Shown here: in pieces, positions 26,601-32,600 of the stretch | Numbering within the stretch: the first letter of the stretch is position 1 | How the letters are laid out: the number at the start of each line of letters is the position of its first letter | Assembly (NCBI RefSeq): GCF_040938485.1 | Contig: NW_027271575.1 | Location: forward strand, 186,001 to 250,000 | Length of the DNA stretch: 64,000 nt | Origin: Diadema antillarum | Lineage: Eukaryota | Direction of reading: 5' to 3' | Program-made: the position numbers and the translations under genes | Notes under the pieces: model-generated | What the model was told of the DNA's origin: nothing | The model's database searches: none | Seen by the model: only the letters and a program-made list of their open reading frames with translations

Positions 26601-29600
26601 ATTATGGTTGATAACATAATAGTGACATAATAACATACATGTAGTGATTGTTGAACTCAAAAAGATAATTAACGAGACAGAATTTGAATTCTCCACCATG
26701 AACACACGATTCGCGACACCACACATTCTGTCTATGCACGGAAGCAAAAAACAACAACAACAAAACAAAACAAAAACAAAAACAAACAGCAACAACAACA
26801 ACAACAACAACAACAAGACACAGACAAAAAACCAACAGTTTTAAAGGATAAATGTCATGCCACTTAATTGGAATAAAGACTTCGAAAGAGATTCTTCAAT
26901 TCATACATTACCTTCAGTGCTGTCATAGCGTACATTCACTGATATTAGTAACGAGAGCTGCATACGGAGAGAAGTATTATTGATGCCTTGATATTTACTG
27001 ATGATGAAACAGTGGACTCCCGTTATAACGAAGTCCTAGGGACCGGCAGTTTTCTTTCGTTATATCGAAATTTCGTTAAAACCGAACCAATAAACAGTAA
27101 AAGGAACATAGAGCGGATAATGTTGCGATCTGAAATTTTACTTCGTTGTAACCGGAATTTCGTTATAACCATGCTCGTCACGCTCGTTATAACGGGAGTG
27201 CACTGTATTGCTGATGATACAATGACAAAGAAGATGGTGATGACGATAATGATAGTGAATCGACAATGATTATGATGGTAATGGTGATGACGACGTCGAT
27301 GGTGACGATGTGATAATAGTGGAAACGATGATAGCGGTAATGATCATGATGGTGGTGACGATGACAAAGACGATAATGGTCATGATGAGGAAGAGAGTGA
27401 TCATGTTGTTTATTCTAAAAACAGATCCTTCATTGCTTGTCTCATTTGGCACATGTTTAGTGTAGTTACGGATGTTGGATGTGACCTGATAGTGAGTGTA
27501 ACAAAATAATGGTTGCAGACTCAACGCAGGGGATAGCAGTGAGAANNNNNNNNNNNNNNNNNNNNNNNNNNNNNNNNNNNNNNNNNNNNNNNNNNNNNNN
27601 NNNNNNNNNNNNNNNNNNNNNNNNNNNNNNNNNNNNNNNNNNNNNNNNNNNNNNNNNNNNNNNNNNNNNNNNNNNNNNNNNNNNNNNNNNNNNNNNNNNN
27701 NNNNNNNNNNNNNNNNNNNNNNNNNNNNNNNNNNNNNNNNNNNTTTCTTAACAAAAAGACGATATGTTCTACGGGATGGTGGGGTGGTGAGATGGTGGAG
27801 GTAGTAATGATATTGGTGATGATGATGCTTTTAGCGATGATTATGATGACAACCAACATCATGTCTGCCATCATTGTCAATGAAAGTCATCCCCCCGTTT
27901 TATTCTCCATCACAGAAAAGCGACCTGGATGAATTCAACGAGAACTTCTACGAGCTGCCTCGAGAAAGTATTCAGCTGGCCAACGAGATCTCCCAAGGGA
28001 CGTACGGCTCTGTCCACCGGGCCAGAGCTTCGTCAGTGCCGGGCAAAGATGGACCGATGGCAGCCGTGGTCAAAGTTCTCAATCGTAAGGACTTCTCCCT
28101 GTCTTTCAGATTTCTTTCTTTCCTCATTTTACCTCCATTTATACCAACATTGTTCACCGGAAATAAAATCATGGGATCTATTCTCCTACCAATTATTTTG
28201 TTTGTTTTTTAACGTCTTTCATCTTTGGGTGATGGTACAATACAATCAGGGAGGTGGCCGTCAACCCAGGACAGTCTAAAACTAATTTGACAATGCACAG
28301 AGGGTTAGACTGAATTTTGAAGAGAAAGAAGATGATGATGATGAAGGAAGAGCAGAAGAAATAGCGGAATAAAAGAAGAACGAAAAAGAAAGAAAGAAAG
28401 ATGGGAATATCCTTACATTCTAAATTCACAGATTCCAGTATTAATTTGTTGTTGTTGTTGTTATACTTGGATTACACAATCTGGATTTTTTGTTTGATTT
28501 GAGGTTATTTCTTTCATTATTTTTATTTTGTAAGTTGATAGATTAAGTACAATGTTCAATTTACGCAAGAAATACCTTGCAACATTTTTTTTACCTTTTG
28601 CCTTGCATTCATATTATTCTCTCTCTTTTTTAAATATCCTTTTCCTTTGGTGAATCAGGTAACGTGACAGCTATGAGCAAGGCAGCCTTCCTAAAAGAAC
28701 TAGAAGCCATGAAGAGACTTCGCGCTCACCCGAACGTCGTGTCCTTCCTCGGCTGCTGCACTTCCTCAGGTATTACTTCCGGGTCATGAAAAATAAAGGA
28801 CGCTCGCGACGTTGTGTGCGAGACATTGCTTTTCCTTCCCATGTTGTAGAGTGGACTCATTCTCAGTTACCCTCGCTGAGAGCTGGCCGTCGTTGATTAC
28901 CTCATACTGGCTTTGCTAAAAATGTCAGAATGGATTAGCTGCTTCCTCTAAAGACGGACTGTCTTAATCATTATAGATAGCTATATTGGCTGCATAAAAT
29001 GCGGGCCGTTTACTTTAGTTTTGGGAGACATAAAAGCGACTCTCATTGGACGAAAAACTTTTTGAACAAACCCTTCATTAAAAAAAAAAACAAATCGCAG
29101 TGGACCTTTTTTTTTGGGGGGGGGGGGATGCGTCTTTCTAATTAGTCAAACTTGTTGACTTTTTGACACTGTCTCAATAATTATAGAATCCTATGTGCTT
29201 ATTGTCATCTAGGACCTACAGGTGATACTTGGAATCCCAGGTATATATTATGACGAGGTCTGTTATTACTTATGTTTGATTTCACCTCATTGATACTTTC
29301 TTCTGTTGTAGATCCATACTACATGGTTCTAGAGTACGCCGCAAAGGGTCCACTCCAAGTATTCCTCCGCCGGAACCGACCGGGCGTGGCCGGGGCTAAA
29401 CCGCCCCCTCCCGTCATCTTCCTGCGCTTCGCAGTGCACGTGGCCAAAGGCATGGCCTTCCTCGCCTCTGAACGGGTACGGACCAAGATGGCTCGGGAGA
29501 TTTGCCCTTGTCAAAATTGCTTCAGAAGTAATCTTTTGAGACTTGCAACCTTATGTGATTGTGATGCTTTGACCACCTCTCACAAACTACGACAAAGAAT

Positions 29601-32600
29601 CCCAAGAATCAAAGTTCACTCAAAACGATTGGCTTTGCAATGACAAAGGATTAGATTCTATACTTAATGGGGTAATGGTTTAGTGATTTCCCAGAGGAGC
29701 TACAGAGGAAGAAAGTGTTAACCTTTGGGGACACAGTGGCCTAGCGAATAAGACTCTTGACTTTCATTTGGAGTGCTTAGGATCGAATCCTGTCAAGTGC
29801 CTACGTCCTTGGACAAGATGTTTTTATTCACGATGTCCCTCTCGACCCAGGTGTACAAATGGGATACTTGCAATGCTAGGGTAGTAATAATGGCAGGGCC
29901 CTCTAGTAGAGCAGTGGTAACACTGAAGAGGCCACCTTGGATAAAGAAGACATTGTTATTATCATTAGTACTACTTTAATTAGCCTTAATCGTCAATTGA
30001 TATCAAATCGAGCTTAGGCAAAATGCCTGTCCAATATGTCCCTAATTATTCTGTTTTTTGCATACATTGTTGGACATTTTTTCCCAGGAAATACAATCAT
30101 ACCGAAGAGAATTCTCCTCGACCAAAATGATCCTATCATCGATATCATAACCCCTGTACAGATCTTCCTTTTATGCCTTTTTTCTGCTTTTTTTGTTTCA
30201 TTTTTGTTAAATAAATTTCATTATTATCTAAACTAAAGAAATGAAAATGAAACAGAAATCTTTCTTCGTTTAGCCATACTATCTGTGCCGCAAGGATTCA
30301 CTTGCTGTAACCATGGTAACACCATTCACATGATGACATCTCTCCATCACTCCATCATTTTGTATCATTCCTGATCCAGGTCATCCATGGCGACTTGACA
30401 ACGCGCAACATCCTCCTCAACGAGCGACTGATCGCCAAGGTGTCAAACGTCAGCCGCGTTCGCAACGTTGTCGAGAACATCGCAGAGGTACTAATCATTG
30501 ACCCTATGCCCTTTGAATCTATTCAACTTAACCCCTCCTATATCGAACATGAAAATATATTTGCTATTTTGAAGTTCAAATGATTTTTTTTTTTGAATTA
30601 CCAGTGATTTTAGGCAGCAGAGGATGATTTGTGGAGCAACATTATTGAAACTATCATATGATGTACTTTAATATTACGAACTATTCATCATATATTATTG
30701 AATAAGTAGTTGTGGTCGGTGATAAAATTAAAACCGGAGGATCTCCCTGTCATACCATGCCTACACTTTCGATTAGTTGCTCCCTGCATATCATGGAAGT
30801 TGATATAATCATACTTAAAACTACTCATTTATTCACAGCTATGTTACAATGTCAGGACAGGTGGGACAATCATTAAGGCTTTTTTATTGGTTCAAGTGGA
30901 GAGTGAAAAACAAAACAAAACACCCCTTTCAAAAAAGTCAATGTTTGAACAGTTGATTGGTTTATGTGTAATAAAACTTCCAAAAGAAAATGTCTGTACA
31001 AAACTGTAAAACATAGTGTCGGTATATACAAAATAAAATACAGTTTAAGAATTCGCATTTGTGTTTATAACCACATTCAGAGCAAATTCATAATTATGTA
31101 TGACCATAGTTCTTAGGATTCCTCCGTATTTTACACCCAAAAATCACAAGGAAAGAAAAAAATGTGATCTTTATTTTTTCTGCGATCGGCCTGTATACCA
31201 GTATTTGCCAGTCGTCAGTCGACGTTTTCGTTTTGTTTTTAAATCTGAGAAGATGGCTGGGTTGCCATTAGATGTACTATCTATGTACTTCCGAGGATAG
31301 TTTTGTCAGAATATAAAGATAACATTCAATCATTTCATCTGGTGTGCAACCTTTTCAGGGTCGACTCGGAGTAAGATGGATGAGTCCTGAGTCGATCTGT
31401 GCTAGCGTTTACACTCCAATGAGCGACGTCTGGTCCTTTGGAGTTCTACTGTGGGAGCTGGTCTGCTTCGGTGCGTACTATTATCTGTAGTGTCTCGGCG
31501 AAAGGCTATTGTGACTATTTTGTGTAAATGATATGCAAATGTATGCTGACACCAGGCAGCAGGTCAAAAAGCACGTTGCAGACAGATAAAATATGCGTTG
31601 AATGAGGATTCAAGGGAGTTTTCGATAATGGATAAGAGTAGTGAGAAACATAAGAACCAGAATAGGCCTACCTGTGGTGACTTTGTCATTAAATTTATTA
31701 GAATTGACCCAATCAAGACATAATGCTGTGTGAATGAACAATAATTATTTTGCAATAACCCTACATATATCCTGCTAGGAAGAACACTGTGTCCCACACT
31801 GTGTTCACAATGTGTTTACATAGTCTGCCACGTGAGAACTTCAAATTCATGAAATTCTTCCGTCGAGTTAAGTCGATATAGGGCAATTAGTTAATCAGTT
31901 GAAATAGTATTATTCTGTTTGACACTGTGAATTGATGATTCACAACACAATGTTAAACACTCGAATTCTAGCAGTGTGAAAATATTTCTCAGTGTGTTCC
32001 CAACGTGTTCACACTGTGATTCACACTTTTGAACACTGTGTTCTTTCCAGCAGGGGTATACTCACATACTCACACACATAATAATCATTTTGATTTTAGG
32101 TCCAATTTATCAATGACGTTTTCATTTGTTTGATACGACAGGTGCCACGCCTTACCCCGGTCTGACGTCACGGGAGATCAAATCCAAAATCCAAGTCGGC
32201 TATCGCATGGACAAGCCTCCCCAGTGTTCCGACGAACTGTGAGTTTATGGTTTCTTTTTCTCTCAGTTATTCTTCAGTTATTCTACTTCCACAGGGACAA
32301 TTCAAAATGAAAATCGGCCTTATACACCATAGCATATACGCTTGAGTTTGTTTGTCCGGTAAGCCCTTGTATTTTGACGTCAACATGACGTGAATAAGTA
32401 GGAAGCATTGCTAAGCCTGGCAGGGTGGAAAGGCATACCACCAATGCATGCACGTATGATGAAGTGCCTTTTTTCATTGGCGCACAAAGAGTTAATACTC
32501 GACGTCCGAAATCACCCAAACTTCCGCTGGACCCCTGAATACCTAGTTTGTTCCAGCAACTTTATCTAAGATGTGCACCTTGTCTGGTAAGAGTATTCGA

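What the first reader, a model, noticed from the sequence alone, without database searches (positions are those of the whole stretch)
27916..31470. Kinase domain has lost DFG and activation-loop tyrosines but keeps Lys, Glu and the catalytic Asp
Seen: the Gly loop is SQGTYG (first Gly lost), the beta-3 Lys (AVVK) and alphaC Glu (KELE) are present, the catalytic loop is HGDLTTRN instead of HRDLAARN, and KVSNVS replaces KISDFG. The activation segment is 25 aa from NVS to SPE with no Tyr, and LGVRW replaces LPxRW. Established: the DFG Asp binds Mg2+, and its loss defines pseudokinases such as PTK7. Seen also: the rest of the fold has no stop or frameshift over seven exons. Inference: a catalytically dead or atypical domain under purifying selection, not a decaying pseudogene.
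Basis: partly seen in the sequence, partly recalled or inferred. Interest (0 to 1): 0.75.

Follow-up and report, generated by a model that had tools for sequence, protein, structure and literature searches.

The report
Sea-urchin thrombospondin-repeat receptor with dead kinase
The window carries an intact, very strongly conserved sea-urchin gene for a cell-surface receptor whose tyrosine-kinase domain lacks its catalytic machinery, and it belongs to an uncharacterised receptor family shared by echinoderms and acorn worms.

Summary
Seven AG..GT exons (27916-33637, + strand) encode a complete tyrosine-kinase-like domain. It has SQGTYG for the Gly loop, the beta-3 Lys, the alphaC Glu, [14 protein letters not shown] in place of KxxDFG, a 25-residue Tyr-free activation segment and LGVRW.

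The domain is the C-terminal part of a 26-exon gene (10201-34340). The gene encodes five thrombospondin type-1 repeats, one transmembrane helix, a long repetitive cytoplasmic region, the pseudokinase and a short tail.

Selection on the domain is extreme. The two allelic copies in this assembly differ by 24 synonymous and 0 non-synonymous changes. Against Diadema setosum the counts are 44-54 synonymous and 1 non-synonymous (dN/dS about 0.006).

Orthologues with the same architecture occur in echinoids, a holothurian (whose model lacks the ectodomain), asteroids, crinoids and two hemichordates, and they form one clade. All of them carry Asn at the DFG-Asp position. The "catalytic Asp" varies among them (Asp, Glu or Asn), so phosphotransfer is not what is conserved.

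The predicted fold is an intact FGFR-like kinase (pLDDT 91.7). I found no alternative exon, allele or paralogue that restores DFG.

Verdict: this is a genuine receptor tyrosine pseudokinase of an undescribed, Ambulacraria-wide family. No biochemical or expression evidence could be obtained here.

The parts
10201..34340 (+). Whole gene: 26 coding exons and 1344 codons plus stop. It encodes a receptor with five TSP1 repeats, a TM helix, a repetitive cytoplasmic region, a pseudokinase and a tail.
   Evidence: The exon chain of D. setosum protein P0013 on its own locus L017 was projected onto the window. All 26 exons have the same length, no gaps, and AG/GT kept. The translation has a single terminal stop.
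10201..14335 (+). Exons 1-3 (10201-10272, 11608-11650, 14240-14335): N-terminal region and putative signal sequence. This is the least certain part of the model.
   Evidence: dN/dS is about 0.4-1.2 here, so exons 1-2 may be mis-annotated in the reference model.
14650..18314 (+). Five thrombospondin type-1 repeats, one per exon: 14650-14820, 15445-15615, 16082-16243, 17382-17549, 18144-18314.
   Evidence: Pfam TSP_1 / TSP1_spondin hits on the window ORFs and on P0013. dN/dS is 0.04-0.05.
18704..20559 (+). Transmembrane helix exon (18704-18867) and conserved juxtamembrane exons (19755-19811, 20452-20559).
   Evidence: A hydrophobic stretch followed by a Lys/Arg stop-transfer sequence. There are 0 non-synonymous changes in all three comparisons. 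The juxtamembrane motif is conserved as far as the hemichordates.
21205..26592 (+). Repetitive cytoplasmic region. Exon 12 (21205-21474) holds an RPG-T/S-A array. Exons 13-15 are 22030-22218, 22968-23100 and 23883-23933. Exons 16-18 (24369-24661, 25130-25757, 26456-26592) hold 22-residue Gly/Met/Gln/Ala-rich repeats.
   Evidence: No Pfam family matched. dN/dS is 0.09-0.23. These are the objects of earlier notes s1-220804 and s1-220843.
27916..28084 (+). Kinase exon 1: degenerate Gly loop SQGTYG (27991-28008) and beta-3 Lys (28072-28074).
   Evidence: The only amino-acid difference from D. setosum in the whole domain is Ser/Ala at the first Gly-loop position.
28659..28769 (+). Kinase exon 2: alphaC helix with Glu (28697-28699).
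29312..29475 (+). Kinase exon 3: hinge with a Leu at the gatekeeper position, alphaD-alphaE and a short Pro-rich insert.
   Evidence: This exon was the query that recovered the orthologues.
30380..30487 (+). Kinase exon 4: catalytic loop HGDLTTRN (30386-30409) and KVSNVS (30437-30454), with Asn AAC (30446-30448) at the DFG-Asp position.
   Evidence: The protein is identical in the C129 allele and in D. setosum. X1 contigs cover 29907-30878 with no difference.
31359..31470 (+). Kinase exon 5: end of the activation segment, P+1 loop LGVRWMSPE (Pro replaced by Gly), and alphaF DVWSFG.
32142..33637 (+). Kinase exons 6 and 7 (32142-32238, 33538-33637): alphaG to alphaI of the C-lobe.
34251..34340 (+). 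Last coding exon: tail ending in the conserved ...RPHTPGS... motif, plus the stop codon.
   Evidence: The tail motif is conserved in Diadema, the holothurian, the asteroids and the crinoids.

Best explanation
The locus is a functional single-copy gene. Its organism is a diadematid sea urchin close to, but not identical with, Diadema setosum. The gene encodes a type-I membrane receptor with five extracellular thrombospondin type-1 repeats and a cytoplasmic tyrosine-kinase-fold domain that cannot carry out canonical phosphotransfer, so it is a receptor tyrosine pseudokinase.

Shown here:
- The domain keeps an intact FGFR-like bilobal fold.
- It lacks the DFG Asp (replaced by Asn), the HRD Arg, the first Gly of the Gly loop, the P+1 Pro that cradles the substrate Tyr, all activation-loop Tyr, and the C-tail docking Tyr of its active relatives.
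- It is nevertheless the most strongly constrained part of the protein, and it is conserved across Ambulacraria.

Inferred:
- The domain works non-catalytically, as a rigid docking or allosteric module, possibly still binding nucleotide through the invariant Lys, the catalytic-loop Asn and the DFG-position Asn.
- It would couple ligand or matrix binding by the TSP1 repeats to a partner kinase or adaptor.
- The Ser/Thr-Pro-rich repeats and the conserved juxtamembrane and tail motifs would serve as the phosphorylated or bound elements.

This is the logic known for PTK7, ROR, RYK and HER3.
For: Sequence and gene model.

Kinase-family assignment: PF07714 exon by exon and on the orthologue.

Purifying selection: 24 synonymous and 0 non-synonymous changes between alleles, and 44-54 synonymous and 1 non-synonymous against D. 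setosum. This gives dN/dS of 0.005-0.006 in the kinase domain against 0.08-0.09 gene-wide.

Orthologues with TSP1 repeats, TM and the same degenerate motifs: echinoids, asteroids, crinoids, Ptychodera and Saccoglossus, plus a holothurian model that starts at the TM.

One clade whose topology follows the species tree: SH-aLRT 95 and 100.

Family-specific states: among 62 aligned tyrosine-kinase domains, Asn at the DFG Asp and loss of the P+1 Pro occur only in this family.

The catalytic-base position is not conserved. It is Asp in Diadema, the holothurian, the asteroids and Ptychodera; Glu in S. purpuratus, L. variegatus and the crinoids; and Asn in Saccoglossus.

Fold: AF2 pLDDT 91.7 and pTM 0.91. 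The best PDB matches are FGFR1-4 kinase domains at TM 0.85.

No DFG-restoring alternative:
- Active-kinase queries hit only the seven known exons in the window.
- The genome has exon-4-like sequence only at the two allelic loci.
- Both alleles, D. setosum and the X1 contigs carry the Asn codon, and no difference is listed for exon 4 in X2.
Against: No biochemical data exist for any member. Inactivity is inferred from motif logic. The HGD catalytic loop by itself is not disabling: four kinases in the alignment combine HGDxxxRN with an intact DFG.

The Lys, the alphaC Glu (in 9 of the 10 family members aligned) and the catalytic-loop Asn are retained. An unusual metal-independent activity of the CASK type therefore cannot be excluded for the Asp-bearing species.

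No RNA run was available, so expression and the exact splice junctions in this species are unverified.

The AF2 model is uncertain exactly in the activation segment (block pLDDT 53-79).

The partners and the ligand are unknown. The scaffold mechanism is an analogy, not an observation.
Confidence: 0.8

Rival explanations
1. It is an atypical but active kinase. The domain would still transfer phosphate by a non-canonical mechanism, for example metal-independent catalysis as reported for CASK, using Lys, Glu, the HGD Asp and the two Asn residues.
For: In this species Lys 1081, Glu 1098, Asp 1181 and Asn 1186 are all present. Lys and both Asn are invariant across the family, which would fit conserved nucleotide binding. 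Four kinases with an intact DFG also use HGD.
Against: The catalytic base is Glu in four orthologues and Asn in one, while the rest of the domain stays conserved. The P+1 Pro and every activation-loop Tyr are lost family-wide, and the first Gly of the Gly loop is lost in all members. One crinoid has also lost the alphaC Glu. Asp-to-Asn at DFG is the classical kinase-dead substitution (established knowledge).
Confidence: 0.1
2. It is a pure scaffold with an occluded nucleotide pocket, as in ROR, PTK7 and RYK. The domain would bind no nucleotide at all, and the retained Lys, Glu and Asn would serve only structural salt bridges.
For: The human receptor pseudokinases with occluded pockets also keep the beta-3 Lys and alphaC Glu (Table 2 of PMC13259870). 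The gatekeeper position here is a bulky Leu, Ile, Phe or Met. The Ptychodera Gly loop is almost entirely degenerate.
Against: It cannot be separated from the nucleotide-binding variant with the tools at hand. The second and third Gly of the loop are kept in all echinoderms, and the DFG-position Asn is invariant although a single transition would change it.
Confidence: 0.3
3. It is a decaying pseudogene or an annotation or assembly artefact.
For: None beyond the degenerate motifs themselves. A 198-base N run lies in the intron just upstream (27546-27743).
Against: There are 26 open exons with conserved splice sites in three sequences. dN/dS is 0.006. Two independent read sets hold the locus. 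Orthologues exist in more than 12 species.
Confidence: 0.01

Closest known systems
Uncharacterised database predictions of the same family: S. purpuratus LOC756169 (XP_030839405.1), L. variegatus LOC121430795, and D. setosum, Asterias amurensis, Antedon mediterranea and Ptychodera flava 'uncharacterized protein'. Others are auto-named 'Cad96Ca-like', 'Shark-like', 'SMU1-like' or 'FGFR4-like'.
   Same: They are orthologues. They share the TSP1 repeats, the TM, the juxtamembrane motif, the repeats and a pseudokinase with Asn at the DFG position, and they form one clade.
   Different: None has a descriptive name or any paper in the searched library. The automatic names are best-hit artefacts. The window's protein differs from the D. 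setosum model by one residue in the kinase domain and by the last splice junction.
   Same: It is a receptor tyrosine pseudokinase with the DFG Asp lost and the fold conserved, and it signals without catalysis.
   Different: PTK7 has seven Ig domains, GxSxxG, HKD and ALG (PMC13259870 Table 2). Here there are five TSP1 repeats, (S/A)xGxxG, HGD and NVS. PTK7 did not appear among the nearest kinase domains in any search.
ROR1/2, RYK, HER3, EphA10, EphB6 and STYK1, the other human receptor pseudokinases
   Same: They share the principle of a degraded catalytic motif set on an intact kinase fold in a single-pass receptor.
   Different: None combines HGD with Asn at DFG, and none has a TSP1 ectodomain.
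Cad96Ca (Stitcher), RET and FGFR kinase domains
   Same: They are the closest active relatives by sequence (38-46% identity) and by structure (FGFR1-4 at TM 0.85). They share the LRRxRP hinge segment, the WMSPES motif and the C-lobe motifs.
   Different: They have intact GxGxxG, HRDLAARN, DFG, activation-loop Tyr, the P+1 Pro and a C-tail xY(L/I)(D/E)L docking Tyr, and they have cadherin or Ig ectodomains. Echinoderms have a separate DFG-intact Cad96Ca-like gene (P0166 and P0209). The trees do not resolve which subfamily is sister.
Engineered or oncogenic DFG Asp-to-Asn kinase-dead mutants such as BRAF D594N (established knowledge, not tested here)
   Same: The same single substitution abolishes catalysis yet leaves a folded domain that can act allosterically on a partner kinase.
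   Different: Those are recent mutations in active kinases. Here Asn has been fixed since before the echinoderm-hemichordate split.

Membership tests
Protein tyrosine kinase fold (Pfam PF07714) | Significant full-length match to the family profile | tested here: met
   Exons 2-7 match profile positions 43-256 in colinear order. Orthologue P0013, which differs by 1 residue in the domain, scores 247.7 bits over profile 1-255.
Protein tyrosine kinase fold (Pfam PF07714) | Bilobal kinase fold | tested here: met
   The AF2 model has pLDDT 91.7 and pTM 0.91. Foldseek matches FGFR kinase domains at TM 0.85 and E 1e-28. The model was made from the D. setosum sequence.
Catalytically competent protein kinase | DFG Asp that binds Mg2+ | tested here: not met
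   Asn (AAC, 30446-30448) is present in the window, the C129 allele and D. setosum. Asn is present in all 13 family members.
Catalytically competent protein kinase | HRD motif with catalytic Asp | tested here: inconclusive
   The motif here is HGD, so Asp is present and Arg is lost. In orthologues the Asp is replaced by Glu or Asn.
Catalytically competent protein kinase | GxGxxG glycine-rich loop | tested here: not met
   The loop is SQGTYG, with the first Gly lost here and in every family member.
Catalytically competent protein kinase | Beta-3 Lys and alphaC Glu | tested here: met
   Lys 1081 and Glu 1098 fall in the canonical columns.
Catalytically competent protein kinase | Measured phosphotransfer or ATP binding | not testable with these tools
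   This needs recombinant protein.
Receptor tyrosine pseudokinase (functional class) | Single-pass receptor, tyrosine-kinase fold, at least one essential catalytic residue replaced, and sequence under purifying selection | tested here: met
   TM exon plus TSP1 ectodomain. Motif losses. dN/dS of 0.006.
PTK7/CCK4 | Seven Ig-like ectodomain repeats and an ALG/HKD motif set | tested here: not met
   The ectodomain is five TSP1 repeats with no Ig hit. The motifs are NVS and HGD, against ALG and HKD.
Cad96Ca / RET / FGFR group | Clustering within one of these subfamilies, plus a cadherin or Ig ectodomain | tested here: not met
   The family is a separate clade with 100% support. Its sister relation is unresolved, and it has no cadherin or Ig domain.
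Ambulacrarian TSP1-repeat pseudokinase receptor (family defined here) | TSP1 repeats, TM, conserved juxtamembrane motif, kinase domain with Asn at the DFG position, and P+1 Pro lost | tested here: met
   The window protein shares all features and sits next to D. setosum inside the clade.

The most novel reading that the evidence does not exclude
This would be a ninth, chordate-absent class of receptor tyrosine pseudokinase that arose before the echinoderm-hemichordate split. Its invariant Asn-for-Asp at DFG, together with the invariant Lys and catalytic-loop Asn, would be kept to bind nucleotide without hydrolysis. The domain would then be a ligand-controlled conformational switch linking a thrombospondin-repeat ectodomain to a partner kinase that phosphorylates the receptor's own Ser/Thr-Pro repeat arrays.
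Probability: 0.25. Interest if true: 0.7.

Novelty: new variant of a known kind. Interest (0 to 1): 0.5.

Why it matters
Receptor pseudokinases are studied almost only through the eight human examples. This family offers an independent, deeply conserved case with a different ectodomain (thrombospondin repeats) and a different way of disabling the active site: Asn at DFG, Gly in HRD, and a catalytic base that drifts between Asp, Glu and Asn.

The drift of the catalytic base among orthologues, while the rest of the domain stays under dN/dS of about 0.006, is a natural experiment. It shows which parts of a kinase fold are needed for non-catalytic signalling.

The near-invariant Tyr-free activation segment and the conserved juxtamembrane and tail motifs point to concrete surfaces to test. 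Sea urchins, sea stars and Saccoglossus are tractable embryological systems in which the gene could be knocked down.

The work also corrects misleading automatic names (Cad96Ca-like, Shark-like, SMU1-like, FGFR4-like). It also corrects a non-canonical splice junction in the D. setosum model.

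Tried and rejected
My first hand-drawn exon borders were off by 1-3 bases and gave stops; they were corrected. A first Pfam call failed on a wrong frame for exon 7.

**Exon detection from allele differences.** Screening stop-to-stop ORFs by the ratio of synonymous to non-synonymous allele differences was too noisy to define exons. I replaced it with projection of the D. setosum protein.

**Expression and reads.** No run on record as RNA holds the locus, so expression and splice junctions could not be checked in reads. 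The one read-laying run used DNA contigs only. X2 coverage of exon 4 is thin (mean word depth about 1.7-3.3 in the two bins that hold it). Eighty-one differences were not displayed, so the statement that X2 has no variant in exon 4 is only partly verified.

**Literature.** Searches for a TSP1-ectodomain RTK, for the sea-urchin kinome and for the gene identifiers returned nothing relevant. Papers outside the library, such as the 2006 sea-urchin genome companion papers, could not be searched, so prior mention there is not excluded.

**Missing DNA for a second comparison.** The look-up of encoding contigs found no record for the L. variegatus isoform. A second interspecific dN/dS (S. purpuratus against L. 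variegatus) was therefore not done. S. purpuratus against Diadema was not attempted because synonymous sites would be saturated.

**The D. setosum last junction.** The D. setosum protein model could not be threaded through its own genome with canonical splice sites at the last junction. I rejected that junction in favour of the GT-AG one.

**Alternative exon.** I looked for an alternative DFG-bearing exon and rejected the idea. The only 'DFGLS' string (4982-5092) has an in-frame stop, E 0.2, and lies in the annexin gene region.

**Paralogue.** I rejected the idea of a DFG-bearing paralogue.

**Not sent or not available.** No complex prediction was sent, because no partner is proposed. The spliced window protein itself could not be handed to the fold and search tools, which accept only references. 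The D. setosum orthologue (one residue different in the domain) served as proxy.

Full report
**1. The observation**

Reading 27700-31700 and scripting the exon borders gives seven + strand exons, all flanked by AG and GT: 27916-28084, 28659-28769, 29312-29475, 30380-30487, 31359-31470, 32142-32238 and 33538-33637. Joined, they make 287 codons without a stop or frameshift.

- SQGTYG, starting at 27991
- AVVK, with Lys at 28072
- KELE, with Glu at 28697
- HGDLTTRN, at 30386-30409
- KVSNVS, with the Asn codon AAC at 30446-30448
- 25 Tyr-free residues from N of NVS to E of SPE
- LGVRW

Exons 2-7 hit Pfam PF07714 in colinear order. Exon 5 alone matches Kit, FGFR and VEGFR structures at about 1e-11. 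In a 62-sequence alignment of tyrosine-kinase domains, the Lys, Glu, His, Asp and Asn fall in the canonical nearly invariant columns.

**2. What the domain belongs to**

Upstream on the same strand lie ORFs with thrombospondin type-1 repeats (Pfam TSP_1 / TSP1_spondin). A hydrophobic helix followed by basic residues and two kinds of low-complexity repeats also lie there.

A profile-free search of 1.84 billion representatives with exon 3 found only 8 hits. Among them were a 1260-residue S. purpuratus protein and a 731-residue crinoid protein. Word searches with kinase regions of family members added the following:
- Echinoids: Diadema setosum (P0013, 1342 aa), Lytechinus variegatus
- Holothurian: Holothuria leucospilota
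- Asteroids: Acanthaster, Patiria, Asterias
- Crinoids: Anneissia, Antedon
- Hemichordates: Ptychodera flava, Saccoglossus kowalevskii
- One unnamed Logan protein (P0108)

P0013 maps colinearly on the window. I threaded P0013 through its own genomic locus L017 and projected the 26 exons onto the window and onto a second copy in the same assembly. Every exon has the same length, no gaps, and AG/GT kept.

The gene spans 10201-34340 and encodes 1344 residues:
- an N-terminal region (exons 1-3, the least certain part)
- five one-exon TSP1 repeats
- a TM exon
- a conserved juxtamembrane segment
- the seven kinase exons
- a last exon encoding a tail with a conserved RPHTPGS motif

**3. Which organism, and what the second copy is**

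The window is G000:C687:186001-250000 of a 1.75-Gb assembly. A colinear copy on contig C129 is 91-98% identical over most of the 60 kb (two short stretches fall to 82-89%).

Genome-wide hits to exon 4 come in pairs. Contigs of run X1 show both versions at comparable depth. An independent run X2 from another study carries C129-type variants, for example 31451 G>C. The two copies are therefore haplotypes of a very polymorphic species, not paralogues.

Introns are only 73-92% identical to the D. setosum reference, while the protein is about 97% identical. The window therefore comes from a close relative of D. setosum, not from that assembly. This is an inference; the tools code organism names.

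**4. Selection**

Nei-Gojobori counts are below. Window and C129 are the two alleles in this assembly.

| Region | Comparison | Synonymous | Non-synonymous | dN/dS |
|---|---|---|---|---|
| Kinase domain | window vs C129 | 24 | 0 | 0 |
| Kinase domain | window vs D. setosum | 44 | 1 | 0.006 |
| Kinase domain | C129 vs D. setosum | 54 | 1 | 0.005 |

Other regions, over the three comparisons:

| Region | dN/dS |
|---|---|
| Whole gene | 0.08-0.09 |
| 22-residue repeats | about 0.2 |
| TSP1 repeats | 0.04-0.05 |
| TM and juxtamembrane | 0 |

The pseudokinase is thus among the most constrained parts of the protein. The single replacement is Ser/Ala at the first Gly-loop position, which is the position already freed from its glycine.

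The kinase exon lengths 111, 164, 108, 112 and 97 and their phases are identical in S. purpuratus. A pseudogene is excluded.

**5. Is it dead?**

| Species or group | HRD position | DFG position |
|---|---|---|
| This window, D. setosum | HGD | NVS |
| Holothuria | HGD | NVA |
| Acanthaster, Asterias | HGD | NAA |
| Patiria | HGD | NAT |
| S. purpuratus | HGE | NSY |
| L. variegatus | HGE | NTH |
| Anneissia, Antedon (crinoids) | HGE | NVA |
| Ptychodera | HRD | NIG |
| Saccoglossus | HGN | NIG |
| P0108 (unnamed) | HGD | NFS |

Family-wide states:
- The DFG-Asp position is Asn in every member.
- The first Gly of the Gly loop is lost in all.
- The P+1 Pro that packs against a substrate tyrosine is Gly or Ala in the ten members aligned.
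- No activation-loop Tyr is present, except one next to the DFG position in S. purpuratus.
- The C-tail xY(L/I)(D/E)L tyrosine of Cad96Ca, RET and FGFR is absent.
- The beta-3 Lys and the catalytic-loop Asn are invariant.
- The alphaC Glu is lost only in Antedon.

Among the other 52 kinase domains in the alignment, none has Asn at DFG or lacks the P+1 Pro.

The catalytic base varies between Asp, Glu and Asn while the domain stays conserved, so phosphotransfer is not the selected function. The Asn codon AAC is one transition from Asp (GAC) yet is kept in all four DNA sequences examined. Selection therefore favours Asn itself.

HGD alone is not diagnostic, since four DFG-intact kinases use it.

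Asp-to-Asn at DFG is the textbook kinase-dead change that leaves the fold, and often nucleotide binding, intact. That statement is established knowledge, not tested here.

**6. Fold**

AlphaFold2 was run on the D. setosum domain (P0013:1035-1329, one residue different from the window) with the 62-row alignment. It gave pLDDT 91.7 and pTM 0.91, with low confidence only in the activation segment. Foldseek's best PDB matches are FGFR1-4 kinase domains (TM 0.85, 36-40% identity). The fold is intact.

**7. Could DFG be restored elsewhere?**

- tblastn of five kinase-domain queries against the whole window hit only the seven exons. The queries were four DFG-intact kinases (Cad96Ca, RET, FGFR4, Tie) and the HRD-bearing Ptychodera family member.
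- The genome holds exon-4-like sequence only at the two allelic loci; the next hits have E above 1.
- X1 contigs cover 29907-30878 with no difference, and no exon-4 variant is listed for X2.

**8. Phylogeny and the closest known relatives**

Two maximum-likelihood trees put all family members in one clade, with SH-aLRT 95 and 100. Hemichordates are sister to echinoderms, and crinoids, asteroids and holothurian plus echinoids follow the species tree. This is single-copy orthology since before the ambulacrarian split. The camarodont urchin branch is long.

The sister subfamily is unresolved among Cad96Ca-like, RET, FGFR/VEGFR and Tie. Echinoderms keep a separate DFG-intact Cad96Ca-like gene (P0166, P0209).

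The eight human receptor pseudokinases have other motif sets and other ectodomains (Table 2 of PMC13259870). PTK7 is an analogy, not a relative. No paper on these genes was found in the searchable library.

**9. Mechanism: shown and inferred**

Shown:
- an intact kinase fold
- loss of catalytic, substrate-binding and phospho-regulatory residues
- extreme constraint
- a near-invariant activation segment (RVRNVVEN..EGRLxxRWMSPES) from crinoids to Diadema and largely in Ptychodera
- conserved juxtamembrane and tail motifs

Inferred:
- The receptor signals non-catalytically.
- The TSP1 repeats bind an extracellular ligand or matrix.
- The pseudokinase serves as a docking or allosteric module for a partner kinase or adaptor.
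- The Ser/Thr-Pro arrays and the TP-containing tail act as phospho-acceptors.

Whether the pocket still binds nucleotide cannot be decided here.

**10. Verdict**

One correction applies: the Asp of HGD is a lineage state, not a conserved feature.

The gene is a new variant of a known kind (a receptor tyrosine pseudokinase). It exists in databases only as uncharacterised or misnamed predictions. Interest is moderate: it is a clean, deeply conserved natural experiment on non-catalytic kinase folds, but not a new principle.

Noticed in passing
window 33538-33637 and 34251-34340; L017 26973-27072 and 27635-27724: The public D. setosum protein model joins ...LLLEKI to SPQEIIDV... across a junction with no GT/AG. 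The 'SPQ' is read from the polypyrimidine tract and acceptor. The canonical GT-AG junction gives ...EKIAAEKK|EIIDV... in the window, the C129 allele and D. setosum. It also matches the intron position in S. purpuratus and the tail length in crinoids and the holothurian.
   Followed up: yes
window 1-64000 versus G000:C129:2404001-2464000 (L011-L016): The two copies in the assembly differ by dS 0.085 over this gene (0.126 in the kinase exons), about half the distance to D. setosum. Local identity ranges from 82% to 98%. Run X2 from another study shares C129-type variants, so both haplotypes segregate. This is unusually deep polymorphism, or the assembly is an unpurged diploid.
   Followed up: partly
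window 18704-20559 (exons 9-11): The juxtamembrane segment after the TM helix (...[22 protein letters not shown]..., then a basic ...LKAKLKK stretch) has no amino-acid change in any Diadema comparison. It is recognisable in all echinoderm classes and both hemichordates. No known motif is assigned to it.
   Followed up: partly
window 34251-34340: The C-terminal tail motif ...(D/N)D.RPHTPGS... is conserved in Diadema, the holothurian, the asteroids and the crinoids (RPYTP in Ptychodera). It is absent from the S. purpuratus and L. variegatus models, which end ...RYEYM. It could be a proline-directed phosphorylation or docking site.
   Followed up: no
They lie in its cytoplasmic region between the TM helix and the pseudokinase. 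They are conserved in kind but variable in number among echinoderms, and nearly absent in the hemichordates.
   Followed up: partly
window 1186-6983, + strand: An annexin gene lies here: Pfam Annexin hits on ORFs at 1186-1395 and 6786-6983, and an annexin-like ORF at 3222-3533.
   Followed up: partly
window 41300-48700, - strand: A multi-exon major-facilitator transporter gene lies here: MFS_1 hits at 44420-44914 and 43514-44131. It accounts for the higher G+C at 40-50 kb.
   Followed up: partly
window 62402-63160, - strand: A 252-residue ORF resembles the C-terminal part of a non-LTR retrotransposon reverse transcriptase by eye. It has no Pfam hit.
   Followed up: partly
window 29635-30016, 31736-32117 and 33073-33454 (introns): Contig depth is in the thousands in both runs, so these are interspersed repeats inside the kinase-domain introns.
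   Followed up: no
P0071 / P0079 (Mytilus 'FGFR-like'): This is another, unrelated degenerate RTK domain in the alignment (YYRLKTSN and TGFG). It looks like an independent mollusc pseudokinase.
   Followed up: no
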